This document shows positions 7,980 through 45,999 of a stretch of 64,000 bases of DNA, in pieces. The notes below the pieces were generated by a model that was not told where the DNA came from, searched no databases, and was given only the letters and a program-made list of their open reading frames with translations. Position 1 is the first letter of the stretch; each line of letters begins with the position of its first letter. A program made the translations under genes and the position numbers. The stretch is from Octopus bimaculoides (taxonomy: Eukaryota), in NCBI RefSeq assembly GCF_001194135.2, contig NC_068990.1, forward strand, positions 71,555,289 to 71,619,288. The letters run 5' to 3'.

Positions 7980-8107
7980 TCAGTCTTTCCATCGATGTGC
8001 ACACTCTACATTACAGCATTTGTAAAATGTCGTCATAGGTTCATCAGCTGACCGAGTCTGAATCTGCATGAAATAGGCTCGTCCATGCTCACACTTGGGA
8101 CAAGTTT
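7980..8107 (-). CDS. POLR3K: POLR3K exon 3 (last coding exon): C-terminal TFIIS-like Zn ribbon [42 protein letters not shown]
   Basis: Acceptor ccatttgttag, phase 1 matching exon 2. Contains QTRSADEP with the acidic DE hairpin and CxxC...CxxxC. TGA at 7980-7982; AATAAA (minus) at 7938-7943. Confidence 0.97.
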
Positions 8108-8700
8108 CTAACAAATGGAAGATAAGAAAAAGGTAAATGAAACTGAAGAATATTATTGATTTATTACATGACAGAAAACAAAGAGGAAGATTACTGCAAA
8201 GTACACACACTACTTTTCAAGATACAAAAATAAACATGTTGCAACTGGAACTTGAAAATGGCTGAGAGTGGTCAATAGACTTTTTATAACTGGTGGTTCT
8301 CGTGTTTGTACACAAAAACATGCACACACTCACACGATTATACATACATTGCACACACACACACACATGTAAAGGTTGAACAGTCAGATCACTTAAAATA
8401 AACACAATATGAAAACTTCTCTCCAAAATGTGACATTGTTTTTTTCAAAAATGATCTTTTTAAAAATAGTTAACTTTTATGGAAATCTTTTTTTAAATAT
8501 TGTGACTGTATTGAGTATTTTTTGGCAAAAAACTTTTAAATACACACACATAATATGTATATATGTATGTGTATATAATCTCAGTGTTTGAATATTTCAT
8601 TTATATATTTTTACGCACCATGTGCTCTGATTTTGGCGTAAAACAAAACCAGTTGCACAATCAGAGACTAACATGAACAGTCACGGATTTAAACTGGTAG

Positions 8701-8756
8701 TCCACACTGACGAGGCTTAGAGTTAAATACCCAAAAGTCGAAACCTGGTTTGTGGA
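8701..8756 (+). ncRNA. Minimal type I hammerhead ribozyme (HHR-1)
   Basis: TCCACA-CTGACGA-[GGCTT..AAGTC stem II]-GAAAC-CTG-GTT-TGTGGA. Perfect 6-bp stem I, complete core, ACCTGGT near-palindromic stem III, GUU cleavage triplet. Confidence 0.85.
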
Positions 8757-8816
8757 TATCCCTAATTGCATAATATTTTTATTTGTGCTGTTAAATGTTT
8801 TAATTCTTTCTGTTTT

Positions 8817-9286
8817 CCTCGCATATTGTTTTTCTGTTATAATGGTGCGCTAAGGTGGATTAATTTAAGACTTAGCTCTTATTTCTAGCAGGTAGATGCT
8901 CATTAAGCATCATTACGCTTCGTGCAAATTTATAATTCATAGCTCTTTAAAGCTATTATAACTGCGTTCCACCCATGCCACTACTGGTGATATCATCAAA
9001 TTTAGAATTTATCCACAGATGATATGAACAGTAGTGACATCTAACTNNNNNNNNNNCCTCGCATATTGTTTTTCTGTTATAATGGTGCGCTAAGGTGGAT
9101 TAATTTAAGACTTAGCTCTTATTTCTAGCAGGTAGATGCTCATTAAGCATCATTACGCTTCGTGCAAATTTATAATTCATAGCTCTTTAAAGCTATTATA
9201 ACTGCGTTCCACCCATGCCACTACTGGTGATATCATCAAATTTAGAATTTATCCACAGATGATATGAACAGTAGTGACATCTAACT
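8817..9286. other. Probable assembly artefact: ~230 bp identical sequence duplicated either side of a 10-N gap
   Basis: 8817-9046 and 9057-9286 read identically and are separated by exactly 10 N. Confidence 0.85.
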
Positions 9287-10292
9287 TCAAATCTCAGTGT
9301 TTGAATGTTTCATTTATATATATATATATATATATAATGTACGTGTGCGTGTGTATATGCATATATATGTGTATGTGTATATATATTTTAATAGTAATTT
9401 GACTCGCTTCCATATGATAAAGTTTTGTAGGCACATAGGAAGAACCCATCTCATCAGATATTGGGAGATATCTGATTTCTGGTGAAATACGTTGTTCCAA
9501 CACACCAACAAAACTTCAAGTCATACAGAGTTGAATCAAACTATTTAAAAATATATGTACATTCTACCAAGTGTGCTGAGTACTACTTTTATCTGTCCAC
9601 TCACATATTATATATATATATACACATATATCTGTGAGGAATCTTGATATATGTTAACAAAATGATATAAATTATGATTTGTATGGCCCATTTTTCTATT
9701 AGTTGTTCCAATCATTGAACTGCAGGCATGTTGAAGTTCTATTTTTGAGTCAATTTAGATTATATAGTCTCCTCTACTTTGTCTAGTACCCAGTCATTGC
9801 TCTCCTAAGAAGGAAATACTTAGTCAACAATCAAATAGAGGAAGATTATTTATCTAAACTTAAATACCATTTCTCTAATATAGACATATGTGTGTGCGTG
9901 TGTGTGTGTGTATGTGATCATCATCATTTAACATCTGTTTTCCAAACTGGCAATGGTTGATCAGTTTGATAGGGGCTGATAAGCCAGAAGACTGCATCAA
10001 ATTCTATTGTAAGCTTTGAAAAGATCTCTATAGCAGGATGCCCTTCCTAACAGACACACACACATATATATATATATATATGAGAGATATTGGTATCCAG
10101 AAGACCCAAGATGGCAGGTAAGGCTATGTAAGTACTACAGACAAGAAGCATTTCTATACATTCTACACACCACTTTCCTTGGATAATGGAACTGCAACTG
10201 TAACATCCTACATATATCTTTATTCTCTTATTTCCCTTTCTACATCCTATATCCATGCTTTACTATTTCCCTCTAGTTAACTCCCTCATATC

Positions 10293-12239: not shown

Positions 12240-12578
12240 ACTTGGTGACCCTGTCAGTGCAGGTGCCACTTAAAAGCACCCAGTCCACACTGTAAAGTGG
12301 TTGGTGTTCGGAAGGGCATCCAGCTGTAAAAACCTTGCCAAAACTGACCTCGCCTGTGCTTGTGCCATATAAAAAGCACTACTGACTTCGCCTGTGCTTG
12401 TGCCACATAAAAATCACTCAGTCCACTGTTGAGTGGTTGGTGTTAGGAAGGGCATCCAACTATAAAAATCCTACCAAAACAGTCACAGAAGTCTGATGCA
12501 GGCTTCAGCCTGGCTGGCTCTTGTGGTACCGTCCTACCCATACTAGCATGGAACATGAATGTTAAATGATGATGATGA

Positions 12579-30529: not shown

Positions 30530-32769
30530 NNNNNNNNNNNNNNNNNNNNNNNNNNNNNNNNNNNNNNNNNNNNNNNNNNNNNNNNNNNNNNNNNNNNNNN
30601 NNNNNNNNNNNNNNNNNNNNNNNNNNNNNNNNNNNNNNNNNNNNNNNNNNNNNNNNNNNNNNNNNNNNNNNNNNNNNNNNNNNNNNNNNNNNNNNNNNNN
30701 NNNNNNNNNNNNNNNNNNNNNNNNNNNNNNNNNNNNNNNNNNNNNNNNNNNNNNNNNNNNNNNNNNNNNNNNNNNNNNNNNNNNNNNNNNNNNNNNNNNN
30801 NNNNNNNNNNNNNNNNNNNNNNNNNNNNNNNNNNNNNNNNNNNNNNNNNNNNNNNNNNNNNNNNNNNATATATATAGATAGATAGATAGAGAGAGAGAGG
30901 GATTGATAGAAAATAAAAACTTGTGAGAGTATGCATGGGCAAGAGCTATTCCAGACTAACCAATATATTTTGTGTACTAAATCTTGAATTGTATGTATGT
31001 CTATCACTGAACTACTCCAGACGTCACAGGAACTACTCAACAAGAACAAGAACAACAACACCAATAATAACGATTTAGTCCCTTTCCATCAACTAAGGGT
31101 GAAACAAAGAAATAATAGTAATAATAAAAATACACACAGACATCTAAATCATTGCCCTTAAATCCTGTGTTCACAATAATACTAAATACAAGTTAAAAAA
31201 ACAAAAAAAGCCTCCTACTACAAACTATCTCAACTGTTCAGAATAAATAAACAAAAAAAATATAACAATTGTAAGGAAATGGAATTTTTTTCCTTTTTAT
31301 TCTTCATTAAGGCACTTTTTGATGCTACACTGCAGTAAATTCTAATCCACTGTTTGAGAAGACATTTTAAAAATGTAGCAATCATCTTTCATTAATGGTT
31401 CGTAGGTTTGTTTCCAGCTCAAAAGCTGAGCAACCACAATGAACAAAATGCTGTCAGTCCACCTACTGAAGGATCAATGGGGTTTTATTTGTTTATTTAC
31501 TTATTTAAAAATTTTCATATCCCATTACTAACACTGGACTGAGTTTATGACCAAGGCACTTAAAATTATCTCAGTCCATTAAGATGTAAGTAGACAACAT
31601 TAGGAGTGCATTGTCCATGGTGATGACCTTTCCGTTTCCTTTACAGAACCTCTAAGGTTGGTGAGAACAAAGAGGGAGAAGACATTGATATCGTCAGACT
31701 AGAGACCTCTTCTGAATGCTTGCTTGGGAGTGGACACCTGCCAGGTACTCAAGGGCCATTTGATAATGTTAGATTAAGTCTATCACTCAATAACATGTAC
31801 AGTTACCTGATAGGTTTCTGTGTACCAAGTTTCATTCATAAGGCATGCATGGATACCATGATTAAATATAAATACCATGTGAATGTTTCTTGAACTCCAA
31901 GGAGCATTTAAGAGTAGATGAGTGATAAAACTCCCCTTGAATAGCATGTGACCAGAGGTGTACATTCTGAAATGGTCTAGCTACCACATGTTCCCCAACA
32001 AACAAATAATCTGAAACAATGTAGAATTAAGTGCACTGCTCAAATATATAACGTACATAAAGTGGATTTGATTGCACTACTAGTGAACCATCAATACAAA
32101 CTGTATCTGGCTAGTGACTTTGCTTCTGTATGTATTGAAAGGTTATGGTGGTGAATTCATATTCTGGGTATGTATAAAAGTCATGATAGAGGCACTCATA
32201 TGAATGAATTTCAACTTATGTGCCTAAAATCCAATGTAAGATAGCACCAACATTATAATGATAGCGATAAATGCGAATACATTTCCATGAAATATAAATT
32301 TAAATGGAAACTTTTTGGTAACACACACACACACATATATATATATATAAAGTAAACCAATAATTGAGAACAACAATATCATATTGTATTTAAAATCTGT
32401 CACAGTAATTAAAAATTTACAAAGGACATAAAAATTCTACAAGAGTTTGTACCCTATGTAGGTCTAGTAAAATACATTCTCAACTATTTCAAATGAGATG
32501 AAACAAATCTAAGACATGGAAAAAAAAATCATAAGGCAAAAATGAATTATTTTGACTAGTTGCAAGGGCTTTTTATAATAATAAAAAAAAAAACAGAGTG
32601 TTGTCAATGAATTAACGCTCCATATATTATTGGCACATATTTTATATCTACTGTTAGAGAAATGAAAGGTAAAACTGTCCTAGTCATGACCTGAACAGAG
32701 AATAGCATGACAAAACTTTTGCAGTTATGAAATACACAGTACAAGTTCTCTACCCCTTGACTAACATTG

Positions 32770-32805
<36 letters not shown>

Positions 32806-33790
32806 TACTAAATAATGATATTAATGAACTGATATTGAAAGGATTTTACTTTATGGCGTTTTATAATTGAAATTTTACCAATCTCATTATTTATTGAAAA
32901 AAAAAAAAAAAGAGAATTTGGGAAATTCTAATGCAGAATTTCAAATTGAAGTAAAAGAAAAGGATACATTGCTAAAATACAAATAGAATTTAAAAAAGAA
33001 AAAGTAAAAATAAAAACCCATAACCAAAATGTTACACATTGATGTGATCTGTGAGAAGATAGATTCATCAGTATGTTTGCTTTAAGTGAAATCGAATTGC
33101 AAAGAAATGTGAACAAGAAGCTGTTAACCATTAGTGTTTTGGCTTATATACATATAACTGCCAACTGAAAATACTACATTTTAAATGTATTACACAGCTG
33201 ATTGCTTAAAAATATAATTCAAAAGCTTAAATTGAAACGAAATTTAATTAGGGACTTAGTTTATTAACAGCTGTGTGTGGCATAATAATCATTAGGATAT
33301 GAAAGGTCACAAAAAAAAACAAAACAATGAAGCTAAAAGTTAATAATAAGCTTGTACTATAAGTTAACACCAAATATTCATTCATGTAAAATTAGTCAGA
33401 TAGGAAAGAATAATTTTTTTTTTTGGGGGGGGGGATATTTTTCAAAACATGTAAAGGACAAAGAAAAAATATAATGAAAAAATAAAACTAAAAATCAAAT
33501 TCTTACTAACATTTTAGCAAGCAGTTAGAATTTTCCTTGAAAATGTTTTATATATTTACAGATGAAAGTTTGTTAAGATTACACTTAATAAAAATTTACA
33601 TAATTTAGAATCATTTTTAGAGATGGTGTTACATATTTGCCAATAACATAATATATAACTACTTCTAAACACTACATCTGGTATTCAGTACTATCAGTTC
33701 CCCTTCTTGTTCACATATATTTTCATGTTTTTTTCATTTTACATATATATATATTATCCAAAGTGTACAGTATTATATATCCATTATGGT

Positions 33791-33878
33791 TGATCTTACC
33801 AATTGGTTTCATGCTAAGGGTACGACAGAGTGTTAGGTGATAATCCGATTATATAACCTTATGCTCGTCAGAGGTAGC
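33791..33878 (-). ncRNA. Hammerhead ribozyme (HHR-3), left arm of the inverted pair
   Basis: Minus strand: GCTACCT-CTGACGA-GCATAAGG...CCCTTAGCAT-GAAAC-CAATTG-GTA-AGATCA. Confidence 0.8.
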
Positions 33879-33896
33879 AGATATGGAATGAAATTG

Positions 33897-33987
33897 GCTA
33901 CCTCTGATGAGCATAGGGTTATATAATCGAGTTATTACCTTAACACTCCGTTGTACCCCTAGCGCGAAACCAATTGGTAAGATCAGC
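33897..33987 (+). ncRNA. Hammerhead ribozyme (HHR-4), right arm of the inverted pair
   Basis: GCTACCT-CTGATGA-GCATAGGG...CCCCTAGCGC-GAAAC-CAATTG-GTA-AGATCAGC. Canonical G-C closure of stem II, palindromic ACCAATTGGT stem III, GUA triplet. Confidence 0.88.
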
Positions 33988-34082
33988 CATGTTGGATATA
34001 CAATACTGTACACTTCGGATAATATACCCACTCTACTGATAGTGCATCTTTTTCCTGACTTATGGACTTTTAGATGACTATG

Positions 34083-34116
<34 letters not shown>

Positions 34117-34124
34117 GCATATTA

Positions 34125-34692
34125 CAAATAAAAGGGTAAAGGATTATCAATTTATTAATTTATTAACAAATTAATAATTAATAATTTTTACCAAGCCCTT
34201 CAGTATGTAAACACCATTATCGGTGAAGAACTTATTTAAAAGTTTTTATACATTTATAAATATAATTAAAGGATCAGCAACAGTTGCTTCACCACATACC
34301 GAAGTTCAGAAATAGCAGCTAAAATGCTGAAGCTCCAACAGATAGCAATACTTGTAACTCACAAAGGCAAAACAAGAAGAAAAAATAACGAACTTAACCA
34401 GTCTTAGTTAATCATAGACGTGTTTCTGGCTTAGAAAGGTAAAAACTTTTCATTTCCTCATCAGTATGATATTCCAGTTGCAAATTCGACGATGCTGGCA
34501 ATTGTGCATGCACGACCGAGCGACATCGTGCATCAGCACAATATGAAACCATCTCCGAACCTACATAGGCCAGCCAGTTCTTATCCCTCCTCAAGAATTA
34601 CCATGTGCGTCACAAGCAATGCCGCAGAAAATCTGTGGTTTACTATCAAGGAGTGAAGCAACTGTTGCTGATCCCTTAATTATGTTTATATG
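34125..34692 (-). mobile_element. Non-autonomous Penelope-like/retrozyme-like element with internal inverted segment, HHR and 11-bp TSD
   Basis: TSD CATGCATATTA at 34114-34124 and 34693-34703; inverted repeat ~34255-34293 vs 34653-34690; hammerhead at 34411-34470. Confidence 0.7.
34411..34470 (-). ncRNA. Minimal type I hammerhead ribozyme (HHR-5)
   Basis: Minus strand: ATCATA-CTGATGA-[GG...CC-A]-GAAAC-AC-GTC-TATGAT. Perfect 6-bp stem I, GUC triplet. Confidence 0.8.
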
Positions 34693-36524
34693 CATGCATA
34701 TTATATATATCAGGTTTGTCTATGTCAGGTAAACAGAATTACATGTCTGGGCTGAAAGACTGAATGCATTCAACCTTATGGTTGACTTTATTCATTAAAA
34801 GATTTAGGTCCAGACGTGTAAACTTGTTTACCTTAAATATGACAAACATATCTAAGACTCTACATACTTCTAGCATAAGTGTGTACTAAGCACACTTTGG
34901 TATTCGTACCACAAAAATAAACACTTGACACATTTTTCTGTAAACCACAAGGAATCTGAAAGCCAGTGGCCGTGCACTAGAAATTATTTTTTGCATTAAA
35001 TATTCTGTAAAATGATTATATAAGCTCGCACACACAATCGCTCACACACCAAACATGCATACAAAAGGTATGGAATTCTGAGAGTTTTGAGAAAGGTAGC
35101 AGTCTAGAGAAGAATATCAACCAAAATGCCAACATTAACTACTGAAAGGCATACTTTTCGAGTTACAAACATGAGTGATAAACAAAGAATTAAATGTTAA
35201 AGGGGAATAACTCTTCCACCAAACTACCAATAATTGAAAGAATCTACTATATATATAGCACAAGAAGCTGTGCGTATTGACTATAGAAATAAAGAAATTA
35301 ACAACAATAGCATGATGTGGTTGTTTAGCCTCAAGTCAGCTCTTTCAGATAAGAACTTACGATCAAAAGCATTTCAGTTGAGAATTTCATATTTTTTTTA
35401 GGGTCATGCTTAAGACTACATAATCCAACATATTGTTTAACGTCCACTTTTCCTTGCTGACACGTGTTGGACGGTTTGACATGGAGCTGTCCAGACTCAA
35501 ACTGTCTGTTGTGGCATGGTTTCTGTGGCTGGATGCCCTTCCTAACTCCAACCACTTAACAGAGTGTGCTGGGTGCTTTTTACGTGCCACCGGCACAGGT
35601 GCTTTTTAAGTGGCACTGGCACCTGAAAGGACAAGCCTTCCTTATTTAAGATGGTAGGGATCATTTGGTTGCAACTTCTATGAAATTAAGGGACTACATA
35701 AAGGGCCTCTCATGAGATCCTTGGCACATATCATATCAGCAATATTGCACTGTTTTTTTGCAAGATCAGACGACTCTTAATGATCCAATGATCCAGTTAA
35801 CTTAGCTGATGATAGGTATCAGAAAGAAGTATAGTTTGAAATGCCTGTATGAAGTGATCATATTACGGTACTAAAAATACTACGAGTTCTGTATTTATGG
35901 ACTGAAATCCTCTTAGATCTTAAAAATCAACAGGGAAAATCCACTTCAATGTATGACATAACATTCCACCTCACAAAATCTTAGGCAGTTCCTCAACAAG
36001 TTGCAAGACATTTTTATTCAACTATTCATCGTATATTATCTAGACAATGTGTTTCATATACTCTTATATATAAATATATATAAATGTACACAAAAAGAGA
36101 AAGTGAGAAAGAGAGAGATACATATATACGTAAATATACATATACATATTTGCTTCCCGACCACGTTTCGGGTTCACTTCCATGGTGTGACACCTAGGGC
36201 AAGTGTCTTCAACAATAGACTCAGGCCAACCAAAGCCTTGTCAGTAGATCTGATAGACAGAGATTGAAAGAAGCTTGTCATATGTACATCTAGGTGTGTA
36301 TGTTTTTGTGTCTGTGTTTGTTCCCCGCCACTGCTTGACAACTTGTGTTTGTGTAATTATGTCCCAGTAACTTAGCTGTTCAGTGGAATAAGTACCAGGC
36401 TTTAAAAAAAAAAAAACTACTGGAGTCGATTCATTCAATTAAAAATTCATCAAGGCAGGGCTCTAGCATAGCTGCAGTCTAATGACTGAAACAAGTAAAA
36501 GATAAAAAATAAAATGTAGATATA

Positions 36525-36990: not shown

Positions 36991-37063
<73 letters not shown>

Positions 37064-38207
37064 ATCAAAGCATACAATATTATAGATCCGTTTCAACCAA
37101 TATCACCAATCCGTTTGGTACTGAGTATTAAATAACTGGATATCAGCTAATAATACAGAGTTAAGAAACATCCACATGGTGCTCAGAAATGGCAGGTATG
37201 GAAAAAATATATGGCTAAACTTGAACTAATAAAATATGTATGTGTGTGTGTGAATGACATATCATGTACACACACACACACACATACTTAAGTTGCACTT
37301 CATTAATGGTCATACTACATTCTAGAAAATGTAATCACTTAAAAGCTGAACCACTGATTATGAAAAATAAATTGATATCTAATTAAGCAAAGAAATAGAA
37401 AATATTTCTACACACAAATATCTGTAAATGGAAAAATATTAATAATAATCCCCCAAAAGAACAAGTAAAAACAAAGAAATGTTTCTTAAATATAATGATT
37501 AACAAAAACGAAGATTTTAAACATTTAGAATTAATGAATAAAGATGGGTAGAAGACATATCTGAAAATTTTTCAATGTTGTACTGGGTTGAATGGATGTA
37601 TAAAAAGATGATTTTAAAACAGTCACCACAAAGACCATATCTGATATTTGGCAGTTGACATTTTCCTGTAAAGCTGGATACATGTACGAAGCATTTTTTT
37701 CATTTACATAACACATCCATAAATAAAAAAATGAAGTATAATGAACCACAGGATTTTAAGTTCCATTCTCTTAGGAATATTTTGTACTAGATTTTTTNNN
37801 NNNNNNNNNNNNNNNNNNNNNNNNNNNNNNNNNNNNNNNNNNNNNNNNNNNNNNNNNNNNNNNNNNNNNNNNNNNNNNNNNNNNNNNNNNNNNNNNNNNN
37901 NNNNNNNNNNNNNNNNNNNNNNNNNNNNNNNNNNNNNNNNNNNNNNNNNNNNNNNNNNNNNNNNNNNNNNNNNNNNNNNNNNNNNNNNNNNNNNNNNNNN
38001 NNNNNNNNNNNNNNNNNNNNNNNNNNNNNNNNNNNNNNNNNNNNNNNNNNNNNNNNNNNNNNNNNNNNNNNNNNNNNNNNNNNNNNNNNNNNNNNNNNNN
38101 NNNNNNNNNNNNNNNNNNNNNNNNNNNNNNNNNNNNNNNNNNNNNNNNNNNNNNNNNNNNNNNNNNNNNNNNNNNNNNNNNNNNNNNNNNNNNNNNNNNN
38201 NNNNNNN

Positions 38208-44289: not shown

Positions 44290-44640
44290 CTGGCACCAAT
44301 GTAAAAAGCACCCAGTTCATTCAGTAAAGTGGCTGGCATTAGGAAGGGCATCCAGCCATAAAAACCATGCCGAAACAGACCTCGCTGGTGCTGGTGCCAT
44401 TCGAAAAGCACCCAGTCCACCTTGTAAAGTGGATGGTGTTAGGAGGAATATCCAGCCATGAAAACCATGCCAAAACAGATGTCACTGGTGCTGGTGGGGT
44501 ATAAAAAGCATCAAGTCTTCTCTGTAAAGTGGTTGGCATTAGGAAGGGCATCCAGCTGTAAAAACCATACCAAAACTAAAAGCAGTCCAACTCATACCAG
44601 CGTGGAAGACTGATGTTAAATGATATTGATGATGATGATA
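44290..44640 (+). mobile_element. (GAT)n-tail SINE with three tandem ~100-bp core modules
   Basis: 'aaaagca..cagt...gtaaagtgg.tgg..ttagga.g...atccagc..t.aaaaccat.cc.aaac' occurs at ~44305, ~44404 and ~44504. Confidence 0.75.
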
Positions 44641-44688
44641 AACGTATATTGTATGTCTCAATAAATGGAAAATATGGTCTGAACTTAC

Positions 44689-45388
44689 CATCAAGCGAAT
44701 AGATTTTAATGCAGGGAATTTTCTAAGTTGTGCTACTTGATCCCATCCGTTAACTGATGTTTTACTAAGACACAAAGTGTGTAATTTCTCAAAGGGTCTT
44801 CCTAATACTTTTTGGTCACATAAATAGTCCTCTTCATTTATGATAAAACTGGAAGAAATACTGCTACCACAACCAGAATCATTGAACCGTGGACTTTCAC
44901 AACTGGAAACTTCTAATGTTTCTTCAATCTCCTGTTTAGAAGAACTATTGCTTGAATCAGAATAAATCACATTTTTGTAGTTGATATCAATAGGCTCAGA
45001 TTCCATCTGATTTTCTTCACAGTCTTGTTTCATTTCAACATCCTGAAGACAGTCAGAATCTGACCAGGTTTTGCAGCTGATAACTGTGAATTCTTCATTC
45101 TGGGATCTAGAATGACACTTCTCAGTAATATCATTAAATACACCAAGATACTGCCCACAAGATACAGAATTGTCCATGAGAAGTTTTCTACGAACATTGG
45201 AAGATTTCAATTTGGTTTCACGCGGAGAACTTGCTTCGGAGAATACCTCCTGCTTCTCAGGAGTTTCAAAGGAATAACTAGTTTCTTCTAATTGTTCAAA
45301 ATGATAAAACAATTCATCCACAGGATTTCCTGATAAAACAAGAGATTTCAAATTTGGCAGATAGCGCAACTTCCATATCTCGAACCAA
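44689..45388 (-). CDS. TBCEL: TBCEL large exon (700 nt): LRR WFEIWKLRYLPNLKSLVLSGNPV, ~160-aa acidic/Ser-rich insert, then LRR FEKLHTLCLSKTSVNGWDQVAQLRKFPALKSIRLM
   Basis: Open frame of 233 codons, acceptor ctcctttccag, donor gtaagt; phases 2/0 consistent. Confidence 0.95.
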
Positions 45389-45999
45389 CTGGAAAGGAGA
45401 AGAAAAATTATATTAGGAGTACTGCATTCATAAAAGATTTTTCATATATAACAGTTTCACAAACTGAATTTATCTTAACAAGGTGAAAATATATAGAGAA
45501 TTAAAAATTTTTTTTTTAATATATATATATTTTAATAACTCCCCTGGAAGAATACAAATCCAGAAGATGCTCTCGTCTAAATTTGCTAGCTCGTGGTATG
45601 CCCACCTTCCCACCCCCTCCACCTGTACCGAAGTTCCTATTCTCTGTCATCCTTTGATTGTCTCCCATGAACACTTCTAAAAGCTTAATGTCATCCCCAA
45701 CTCCTACCTAGGGTTTATCGATCATATAGTGCATAAAAATGATGGTGTAGTGTATGCAGGTTGAAGGCTATTGTTTGTTCATGCATTCTGCCAAATGTGA
45801 GCTTTCCTTTTAGGTACATGACGCTGCTGTCCCCCATCCCAGGGTCTCACGGGCCCACATCTCTCACACCCTCAGAGTTGGTACACTGAAAGGTAGGTCT
45901 GGTAAGATGCTTGAATGAAGATGTGTCGATTTGTGCTGCCTCCAAGAAATAAGGTGGAGAGGAGGTTCCTCTAGGTTCTTCACAGACAAAGAACACAGG

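What the first reader, a model, noticed from the sequence alone, without database searches (positions are those of the whole stretch)
33751..34024. Back-to-back pair of hammerhead ribozymes forming a ~130-bp-arm fold-back
Seen: a long inverted repeat in which each arm is a complete hammerhead core facing away from the 18-nt centre. Plus arm: CTGATGA 33904-33910, GAAAC 33966-33970, predicted cleavage after GTA 33979. Minus arm: CTGACGA 33871-33865, GAAAC 33810-33806, cleavage after 33797. The arms differ at about 15 sites, yet the core, the palindromic stem III (ACCAATTGGT) and the cleavage triplet are intact. Stem II shows a compensatory change (UAGGG/CCCUA vs UAAGG/CCUUA), and stem II is unusually long (~55 nt). 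Established: Penelope-like elements carry hammerheads in their pLTRs and can have inverted pLTR segments. Inference: a transcript from either strand would contain one self-cleaving ribozyme competing with a long hairpin that sequesters it, a possible RNA switch or a source of dsRNA. The minus arm has lost canonical stem II closure (GCAT vs GCGC) and may be weaker.
Basis: partly seen in the sequence, partly recalled or inferred. Interest (0 to 1): 0.9.

Follow-up and report, generated by a model that had tools for sequence, protein, structure and literature searches.

The report
Decayed inverted hammerhead retroelement pair
The inverted repeat and its two hammerhead-ribozyme motifs are real, but they look like the old, neutrally decaying scar of a Penelope-type retroelement insertion in an octopus genome, a known kind of structure and not a working RNA switch.

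Summary
Arms 33750-33878 (-) and 33897-34026 (+) are 88% alike around an 18-nt centre, and each carries a type-I hammerhead core with a palindromic helix III and a 55-nt helix II. A motif this good is not expected by chance (under 0.01 per shuffled window), although no Rfam hammerhead model detects it.

The window is Octopus bimaculoides. The same fold-back sits at the orthologous, unannotated intergenic site in O. sinensis and O. vulgaris. It changes at the same rate as its flanks (5-6%), shows no covariation, and has a G.U at 10.1-11.1 in five of six arms. All three minus arms also carry a mismatch at the base of helix II.

The 18-nt centre continues the minus copy. The unit ends abut (TA)n, one side has a 59-bp extra 'tail', and a third diverged solo copy abuts (AT)34 at about 37.1 kb. 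This anatomy matches published Penelope-like-element insertions: inverted 5'-truncated copies, AT-rich targets, a one-sided tail and hammerheads on opposite strands. No RT/GIY-YIG ORF lies in the window, so family membership is inferred, not shown.

Verdict: a new member of a known kind, of low to moderate interest. The RNA-switch reading is not supported.

The parts
33740..33754 (.). Left (TA)n tract abutting the 3' end of the minus copy; probably a remnant of the microsatellite target
   Evidence: longer in O. sinensis and O. vulgaris, where it replaces the outer ~18 nt of the arm
33750..33896 (-). Minus copy of the unit (147 nt, read 33896->33750). Hammerhead-like motif: CUGACGA 33871-33865, GAAAC 33810-33806, helix III 33807-33798, H17 33797. 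The base of helix II is broken (G.U then C.A)
   Evidence: the hammerhead fold scores +10.7 kcal/mol against an MFE of -19.3
33879..33896 (-). The '18-nt centre': the 5' continuation of the minus copy, not a neutral spacer. The junction of the two copies is 33896/33897
   Evidence: It aligns collinearly with the third copy at 37.2 kb
33897..34026 (+). Plus copy (130 nt, shorter by 18 nt at its 5' end) with a complete type-I hammerhead. Helix I 5' strand 33897-33903, core 33904-33910, helix II 33911-33965, GAAA 33966-33969, palindromic helix III 33969-33978, cleavage predicted after A33979, helix I 3' strand 33980-33988
   Evidence: a trimmed 98-nt RNA has a hammerhead-like three-way junction as its MFE, -22.3; the homodimer scores -55.8 with a 10-bp intermolecular helix III
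34027..34085 (+). 59-bp unique segment between the end of the plus copy and the right (TA)n, present in all three species; candidate PLE-type one-sided 'tail'
   Evidence: (no similarity to the arms). The tail concept comes from PMC8557442 and PMC11167929. Inference
34086..34113 (.). Right (TA)14 tract, the other half of the presumed microsatellite target
37058..37207 (-). Third, diverged solo copy of the same unit (about 60% identity). Its 3' end abuts (AT)34 and a short TATATA lies at its 5' side. Its hammerhead core is destroyed (CTGAGCA, CAAAC)
   Evidence: nhmmer E = 4e-4 with the TA-rich end removed
36994..37061 (.). (AT)34 microsatellite at the 3' end of the third copy

Best explanation
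The fold-back is the scar of an old retrotransposition event. Two copies of the 3'-terminal ~130-147 nt of a short hammerhead-bearing retroelement were joined head to head inside a (TA)n microsatellite. The element was either a Penelope-like element or a non-autonomous unit mobilised by one. The most likely mechanism is inferred from published PLE biochemistry. The GIY-YIG endonuclease cuts both strands of an AT-rich target. Both 3'-OH ends prime reverse transcription near the 3' end of the element RNA. The two cDNAs stop early, after 147 and 130 nt, and are ligated 5' to 5' at 33896/33897. One side starts at a more distal site, which leaves the 59-bp 'tail'. The hammerhead travels along only because it lies about 50 nt upstream of the reverse-transcription start. 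The insertion predates the split of O. bimaculoides from O. vulgaris and O. sinensis and has decayed neutrally since, largely by CpG transitions. Today only the O. bimaculoides plus arm keeps a fully canonical hammerhead. Its weak palindromic helix III would need a second copy on the same strand to act as a dimer, and there is none. Any transcript spanning both arms would instead form a ~130-bp imperfect hairpin that sequesters the core. The locus therefore most likely has no ribozyme function now.
For: Shown here:
- The inverted repeat and motifs are real, and the motif is far better than chance.
- The centre is homologous to the continuation of the unit in a third copy, so the structure is two unequal copies joined at 33896/33897.
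- The minus copy abuts (TA)n, the third copy abuts (AT)34, and the plus copy is followed by 59 bp and then (TA)14.
- The window is O. bimaculoides CM046610.1.
- The fold-back is present at the orthologous site in O. sinensis and O. vulgaris, and no gene is called over it there.
- Substitution in the element is 5.2-6.0%, against 4.6-6.0% in the flanks.
- There is no covariation signal.
- The fixed arm-specific differences are shared by all species, so the duplication is older than the speciation.
- A second, canonical minimal type-I hammerhead sits in a separate O. bimaculoides-specific insertion in the same window. This shows that hammerhead-bearing mobile elements were active in this lineage.

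From the literature:
- PLE insertions are 5'-truncated, often have an adjacent inverted 5'-truncated copy and a one-sided 30-40-bp tail, and some clades (shown for Naiads) favour (TA)n targets (PMC8557442).
- PLE hammerheads have a small palindromic helix III and a long helix II. They occur as truncated solo copies or as pairs 100-700 bp apart on opposite strands (PMC4209133).
- A purified PLE protein cleaves and extends both DNA strands at AT-rich sites and starts reverse transcription internally at two sites that delimit the tail. It does not need hammerhead cleavage for insertion (PMC11167929).
Against: - No reverse transcriptase or GIY-YIG ORF was found among 129 ORFs of 70 aa or more in the window, and I could retrieve no other genomic copy, so the link to PLEs rests on anatomy alone.
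- The tail is 59 bp, not the published 30-40 bp, and I could not show that it belongs to the element.
- No target-site duplication can be read in a microsatellite.
- The third copy is a weak match (E = 4e-4).
- Rfam hammerhead models do not score either arm.
- The 55-nt helix II is atypical for PLE hammerheads.
- The 12% arm divergence could also mean two separate events or two different templates.
Confidence: 0.62

Rival explanations
1. A selected RNA device. Transcripts from either strand carry one self-cleaving hammerhead that competes with a long hairpin, acting as a conformational switch or a regulated source of dsRNA.
For: The core nucleotides are intact in all six arms. There is one stepwise compensatory pair, 33-76: G-C, G.U, A-U. 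The structure has been retained in three species. The trimmed plus arm folds as a hammerhead-like junction and dimerises through helix III in silico. The hairpin is very stable.
Against: The substitution rate equals that of the flanks. Covariation is at shuffle level, 245/500. The 10.1-11.1 pair is G.U in five of six arms, and 10.2-11.2 is mismatched in all three minus arms. The outer left arm is missing in two species. No gene is annotated over it. There is no partner hammerhead on the same strand for dimer activity. An intact 11-nt core at about 12% divergence is expected roughly one time in four by chance (my estimate).
Confidence: 0.05
2. A fold-back or MITE-type DNA transposon with ~130-bp terminal inverted repeats and a TA target-site duplication, whose arms happen to derive from a hammerhead-bearing sequence.
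For: A near full-length inverted repeat with a short centre, flanked by TA. It is short (277 bp), and the window has other MITE-like inserts.
Against: The centre is a collinear continuation of one arm, not a unique loop. A related solo copy has only one arm and the same 3' end against (AT)34. The two outer ends are asymmetric: the right has a 59-bp extra segment before (TA)n and the left has none. The termini do not look like the Tc1/mariner or Stowaway termini I know, which is recalled from memory and not tested.
Confidence: 0.12
3. A single retroposed copy (PLE-, SINE- or retrozyme-derived) was later, or during its integration, duplicated in inverted orientation. The cause would be snap-back self-priming or template switching in replication or repair, not priming on both target strands.
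For: The geometry fits equally well: one arm continues into the loop and the other starts exactly where complementarity resumes. Solo copies of the family exist.
Against: Snap-back copying should also duplicate the flank of the first arm, but the right side carries a 59-bp unrelated segment. Priming on both strands has direct biochemical support for a PLE (PMC11167929), and inverted 5'-truncated neighbours are a recurrent PLE signature (PMC8557442).
Confidence: 0.15
4. A chance hammerhead look-alike inside an ordinary inverted duplication, with no ribozyme ancestry.
For: No Rfam hammerhead hit. The relaxed descriptor fires 0.18 times per shuffled window. The third copy has no core. No cleavage data exist.
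Against: With G10.1-C11.1 the expectation falls to 0.01 per window, with helices this good to 0.006, and with a palindromic helix III to 0 in 1000. About 110 kb of other octopod DNA gave no other hit. The palindromic helix III, the long helix II and the context are the published hallmarks of retroelement hammerheads (PMC4209133).
Confidence: 0.05

Closest known systems
Truncated or inverted Penelope-like element (PLE) insertions carrying pseudo-LTR hammerheads (Cervera & de la Pena 2014, PMC4209133; Craig et al. 2021, PMC8557442; Frangieh et al. 2024, PMC11167929)
   Same: Type-I hammerhead with a small palindromic helix III and a longer-than-usual helix II. Copies are truncated at the 5' end. 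An inverted copy adjoins head to head. Pairs of hammerheads lie on opposite strands about 100-700 bp apart. The target is AT-rich or (TA)n, with an extra tail at one end only. The hammerhead lies a few tens of nt upstream of the 3' end of the insertion.
   Different: No RT/GIY-YIG ORF or longer pseudo-LTR is at hand. Helix II is 55 nt, not 6-8 bp. There is no unpaired base between A9 and 10.1. The tail is 59 bp, not 30-40 bp. The unit may be a ~150-nt non-autonomous element and not a truncated full PLE.
Animal non-LTR retrozymes (Cervera & de la Pena 2020, PMC7229834; Li et al. 2026 preprint, doi 10.64898/2026.07.22.740005)
   Same: A short, AT-rich, non-coding unit with a type-I hammerhead whose helix III favours dimers. 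Retrozymes are proposed to derive from PLE pseudo-LTRs.
   Different: Retrozymes are head-to-tail tandem arrays, so two same-strand hammerheads can excise a 170-400-nt RNA. Here the copies are inverted, so no unit-length RNA can be released and no same-strand partner exists.
Hairpin-RNA (hpRNA) loci and inverted-repeat transposon pairs that yield dsRNA
   Same: A ~130-bp imperfect inverted repeat with a short loop. The predicted hairpin is -192 kcal/mol.
   Different: There is no evidence of transcription, processing or conservation beyond neutrality. No Rfam miRNA or hairpin family matches the arms.

Membership tests
Hammerhead ribozyme (type I) | Conserved core C3 U4 G5 A6 N7 G8 A9 / G12 A13 A14 / A15.1-U16.1 / H17 | tested here: met
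   Present in both O. bimaculoides arms and in all four orthologous arms
Hammerhead ribozyme (type I) | G10.1-C11.1 pair closing helix II next to the core | tested here: inconclusive
   G-C only in the O. bimaculoides plus arm, G.U in the other five arms. 10.2-11.2 is C.A in all three minus arms. The C-G12 step is a CpG and the third copy has C at this position, so an ancestral C is plausible
Hammerhead ribozyme (type I) | Three helices around the core, with helix I open | tested here: met
   Plus arm: helix I 2+5 bp, helix II 2+5 bp plus a distal hairpin, helix III 3 bp with an AAUU loop. The minus arm does not meet this
Hammerhead ribozyme (type I) | Match to the curated Rfam hammerhead covariance models (clan CL00010) | tested here: not met
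   No hit at gathering score or at E<=10. A control minimal hammerhead at 8692-8749 scores only 19 bits (Hammerhead_3, gathering score 48.5), so the models are weak for this class
Hammerhead ribozyme (type I) | Covariation supporting the helices | tested here: not met
   Six arms: one pair changed on both sides; 245 of 500 shuffles reach the observed score
Hammerhead ribozyme (type I) | Site-specific Mg2+-dependent self-cleavage | not testable with these tools
   Needs in vitro transcription of 33890-33995 as a monomer, as a dimer and with an extended helix III
Penelope-like element insertion | ORF with telomerase-like RT plus GIY-YIG endonuclease in the copy or its family | tested here: not met
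   Pfam scan of 129 ORFs of 70 aa or more across the window: no RVT or GIY-YIG hit. The family-level link could not be tested because no octopus genome-wide DNA search was available
Penelope-like element insertion | Hammerhead motif in the terminal repeat region near the 3' end of the insertion | tested here: met
   The cleavage site lies 47 nt from the shared 3' end of the arms
Penelope-like element insertion | 5'-truncated copies with an adjacent inverted 5'-truncated copy | tested here: met
   Two copies of 147 and 130 nt are joined 5' to 5' at 33896/33897, and the centre is homologous to the unit
Penelope-like element insertion | Optional short tail at one end only | tested here: inconclusive
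   A 59-bp unique segment on the right side only, between the arm end and (TA)14, present in three species. I could not show that it belongs to the element
Penelope-like element insertion | AT-rich or microsatellite target | tested here: met
   (TA)n lies on both sides of the fold-back and (AT)34 at the third copy
Non-LTR retrozyme | Head-to-tail tandem repeats, each with a hammerhead on the same strand | tested here: not met
   No tandem array at the locus apart from (TA)14; the two motifs are on opposite strands
MITE / fold-back DNA transposon | Both terminal inverted repeats in every copy, with a fixed target-site duplication | tested here: inconclusive
   A TA duplication cannot be read in (TA)n. 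The one other copy in the window is single-armed. Genome-wide copies are needed

The most novel reading that the evidence does not exclude
The unit could be a previously undescribed short (~150-nt) non-autonomous hammerhead element of octopods. In this reading its unusually long, hairpin-forming helix II is a functional handle, for example for the mobilising PLE protein. Its head-to-head integrations would create hairpin RNAs that feed small-RNA or ADAR pathways, so the O. bimaculoides plus-arm ribozyme and the hairpin would still interact in transcripts.
Probability: 0.06. Interest if true: 0.6.

Novelty: new member of a known kind. Interest (0 to 1): 0.25.

Why it matters
It adds a cephalopod example to the catalogue of retroelement-borne hammerheads, with an unusually long helix II. 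It is also a clean, dated case: present in three Octopus species, and decaying neutrally with CpG-driven loss of the G10.1-C11.1 pair. This shows what such motifs look like once they are no longer under selection. It illustrates the head-to-head geometry expected if a PLE enzyme primes on both target strands, as shown in vitro in 2024. It does not open a new mechanism. For genome scans the practical lesson is that an intact hammerhead core inside an inverted repeat is not evidence of function.

Tried and rejected
- Rfam at gathering score over the whole window and at E<=10 on 601-nt and 116-nt stretches gave no hammerhead hit for the arms, only TA-repeat 'miRNA' noise.
- An exact 20-mer (GAAACCAATTGGTAAGATCA) was scanned in two collections. 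Viral contigs gave 0 hits. Metagenome contigs gave 3 hits, all chance matches in coding DNA with no CUGANGA upstream. These collections do not hold octopus DNA.
- A protein search with the 56-aa ATG ORF that starts inside CUGAUGA found nothing. I then considered that this ATG might be a PLE ORF start, as in the anole element. I rejected the idea because the ORF exists only through a 1-nt insertion private to the O. bimaculoides plus arm; in the other five arms the frame stops after 11 codons.
- Full-text searches for the helix III and flank sequence found no papers, and no supplements were held for PMC8557442.
- The Argonauta hians ortholog locus (L009) was too diverged to align, so no empty site could be shown.
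- Searching all fetched loci with an arm profile and with the hammerhead descriptor found no further copies.
- The helix II insert folds better than mononucleotide shuffles in the plus arm (z = -2.9) and in the third copy (z = -2.3), but with different structures, so it gives no usable covariation.

Full report
**1.

The sequence at 33750-34026 is a long inverted repeat. The repeat finder reports arms 33750-33835/33941-34026 and 33835-33878/33897-33940, offset by one base because of a 1-nt indel, around an 18-nt centre at 33879-33896. Aligned to each other the arms are 87.7% identical over 130 nt.

- Plus arm: CTGATGA 33904-33910, a 55-nt helix II at 33911-33965, GAAAC 33966-33970, the palindrome ACCAATTGGT at 33969-33978, and H17 = A33979.
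- Minus arm: CTGACGA 33871-33865, GAAAC 33810-33806, and H17 at 33797.

As one RNA the unit folds into a single hairpin of -192 kcal/mol (z = -25 against shuffles).

**2. Is the hammerhead more than chance?**

No Rfam hammerhead model matches either arm. This holds at gathering score and at E<=10 in 601-nt or 116-nt searches. The models are weak for this class, however. A compact, canonical minimal type-I hammerhead that I found elsewhere in the window (8692-8749) reaches only 19 bits for Hammerhead_3, whose gathering score is 48.5.

I therefore wrote a descriptor: CUGANGA, helix II with at least 2 closing pairs and at least 5 pairs in all, GAAA, helix III closed by A15.1-U16.1, H17, and helix I of at least 5 pairs.
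- In the window it finds exactly two sites, 8707 (+) and the plus arm at 33904.
- In 1000 dinucleotide shuffles it fires 0.18 times per window. That falls to 0.01 with G10.1-C11.1, to 0.006 with helices as long as observed, and to zero with a perfectly palindromic helix III.
- About 110 kb of other octopod DNA gave no hit apart from the ortholog of the plus arm.

The minus arm fails the descriptor because the base of helix II is G.U followed by a C.A mismatch.

Folding agrees with this. A 98-nt trimmed plus-arm RNA has a hammerhead-like three-way junction as its MFE (-22.3 kcal/mol). Two copies gain about 11 kcal/mol by forming a 10-bp intermolecular helix III. The minus arm scores +10.7 kcal/mol in the hammerhead fold, against an MFE of -19.3.

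The plus arm is therefore a credible dimer-type type-I hammerhead by sequence. The minus arm is a damaged copy.

**3. Where the window comes from, and the orthologs**

An exon at 8091-8207 (-) encodes the C-terminus of RNA polymerase III subunit RPC10 and is 100% identical to the Octopus protein. The fetched O. bimaculoides locus (GCA_001194135.2, CM046610.1) matches the window at 100%. Window position w corresponds to record position 71,555,288 + w.

Through the neighbouring SNRNP25 gene I fetched the orthologous regions of O. sinensis (L007) and O. vulgaris (L008). Window 32335-34104 aligns to both without a break, so the fold-back is present in all three species at the same site. No gene is called over it in either annotation. 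This excludes an assembly artefact and dates the structure to before the species split.

**4. The element is not under selection**

Mismatch rates between O. bimaculoides and the other two species are 5.2-6.0% in the element and 4.6-6.0% in 1.4-kb flanks on each side. Between the close pair O. sinensis and O. vulgaris the element is actually more diverged (4.8% against 1.2-1.9%). About half of those differences are CpG transitions.

I counted the hammerhead structure on the six arms (two arms in each of three species).
- 89% of cells pair, but covariation equals the shuffled control (245/500).
- One pair has changes on both sides (33-76: G-C in three arms, G.U in two, A-U in one).
- Several pairs are broken in three to five arms.
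- The 10.1-11.1 pair is G.U in five of six arms; only the O. bimaculoides plus arm has G-C. The C11.1-G12 step is a CpG and the diverged third copy has C at this position, so loss by CpG decay is plausible.
- O. sinensis and O. vulgaris lack the outer ~18 nt of the left arm, where their (TA)n tract directly abuts the remainder.

With about 12% arm divergence, an untouched 11-nt core is expected about one time in four by chance (my estimate). The intact cores are therefore not evidence of constraint.

Differences that separate plus from minus arms are shared by all three species, so the duplication is older than the speciation.

**5. Anatomy of the insertion**

A sensitive search of the window found a third, diverged copy on the minus strand at about 37207-37058. 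It is roughly 60% identical and collinear over positions 9-130 of the unit (nhmmer E = 4e-4 with the TA-rich end removed). Its 3' end abuts (AT)34 at 36994-37061, a short TATATA lies at its 5' side, and its hammerhead boxes are destroyed.

This copy aligns through the '18-nt centre'. The centre is therefore the 5' continuation of the minus copy. The fold-back consists of two copies of unequal length (147 and 130 nt) joined 5' to 5' at 33896/33897.

The 3' end of the minus copy runs into (TA)n at 33740-33754. The plus copy ends at 34026 and is followed by a 59-bp unique segment and then (TA)14 at 34086-34113. That arrangement is kept in all three species.

The simplest reading is an insertion into a (TA)n microsatellite with an extra 'tail' on one side only.

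**6. Comparison with what is known**

- Cervera and de la Pena (PMC4209133) showed that metazoan PLEs carry minimal type-I hammerheads in their pseudo-LTRs. These have a larger helix II, palindromic 15.2-16.2 positions and loop 3, and low, dimer-dependent activity. Most genomic motifs are solo remnants of truncated PLEs, and some occur as pairs 100-700 bp apart on opposite strands.
- Craig et al. (PMC8557442) describe PLE insertions as heavily 5'-truncated. They often have an inverted 5'-truncated copy immediately adjacent and a 30-40-bp tail at one end, and some clades (Naiads) favour (TA)n targets.
- Frangieh et al. (PMC11167929) showed that a purified PLE protein cuts and extends both strands of an AT-rich target. 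It starts reverse transcription at two internal sites that delimit the tail. It does not need hammerhead cleavage for insertion, and the hammerhead itself is protein-assisted.

The octopus fold-back fits this picture point by point. That is why I favour a PLE-type integration product.

What is missing is the defining link. No RT/GIY-YIG ORF is in the window, and I could not search the octopus genomes for longer copies. Membership in the PLE family is therefore inferred and not shown.

It is not a retrozyme in the working sense, because the copies are inverted and not tandem. A fold-back or MITE DNA transposon is not excluded. It is disfavoured by the single-armed third copy, the asymmetry of the outer ends, and the centre being part of one arm.

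**7. Mechanism and present state**

Shown here:
- two unequal inverted copies;
- TA-repeat flanks;
- a one-sided extra segment;
- an age greater than the species split;
- neutral decay.

Inferred:
- priming on both strands of a nicked (TA)n target;
- early termination and 5'-5' joining;
- a distal reverse-transcription start on one side, which would produce the tail.

A snap-back or template-switch duplication of a single copy is a live alternative.

If the locus is transcribed today, the hairpin should dominate, and the only canonical ribozyme (the O. bimaculoides plus arm) has no same-strand partner for its weak helix III. A role as a switch or a regulated dsRNA source is not supported by any evidence here.

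**8. Verdict**

The feature is a new member of a known kind, with an unusually long helix II as its only distinctive trait. Interest is low to moderate.

Noticed in passing
window 8578-9321 (hammerhead: core 8707-8713, GAAA 8740-8743, cleavage after T8750, + strand): A second, unrelated hammerhead-bearing insertion. It has a compact type-I hammerhead (helix I 7-10 bp, helix II 5 bp, very short helix III; Rfam Hammerhead_3 19 bits, E = 0.095). The element is bounded by a 32-nt direct repeat (8578-8609 and 9290-9321). It contains a 240-bp internal tandem duplication interrupted by a run of N at 9047-9057. It is absent from O. vulgaris and O. sinensis, which carry a different SINE-like insert at the same TA-rich spot, so it is a younger, O. 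bimaculoides-lineage insertion. It probably lies in an intron of POLR3K.
   Followed up: partly
window 8091-8207 (-) and about 17.4-25.7 kb (+): The last coding exon of POLR3K (RPC10) and the neighbouring, divergently transcribed SNRNP25 gene. POLR3K and SNRNP25 are also adjacent in the human genome (recalled from memory, not tested here). The pair identifies the window as Octopus bimaculoides CM046610.1 from about position 71,555,289.
   Followed up: yes
window about 34114-34697: A ~590-bp segment next to the right (TA)14 that is present only in O. bimaculoides. It has internal 38-nt inverted repeats (34255-34292 / 34653-34690, 95%) and similar sequence at both edges (CATGCATATTA), so it looks like a lineage-specific transposon insertion into the same microsatellite.
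   Followed up: no
window 33775-34026 against L007 and L008: Between the closely related O. sinensis and O. vulgaris the fold-back is about 3 times more diverged (4.8%) than its flanks (1.2-1.9%). About half of the differences are at CpG sites, and some sites (N7 of the core, alignment column 46) show the same base in both arms of one species. This may reflect CpG hypermutability of a methylated repeat or occasional arm-to-arm conversion.
   Followed up: partly
window 44304-44576, 12343-12418, 35572-35622: Repeats with the motif GGTGCCA...AAAAAGCACC, typical of an abundant octopus SINE-like family, including a 100-bp unit repeated 2.7 times. An ORF with leucine-rich repeats lies next to it at 44542-45441 (-).
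   Followed up: no
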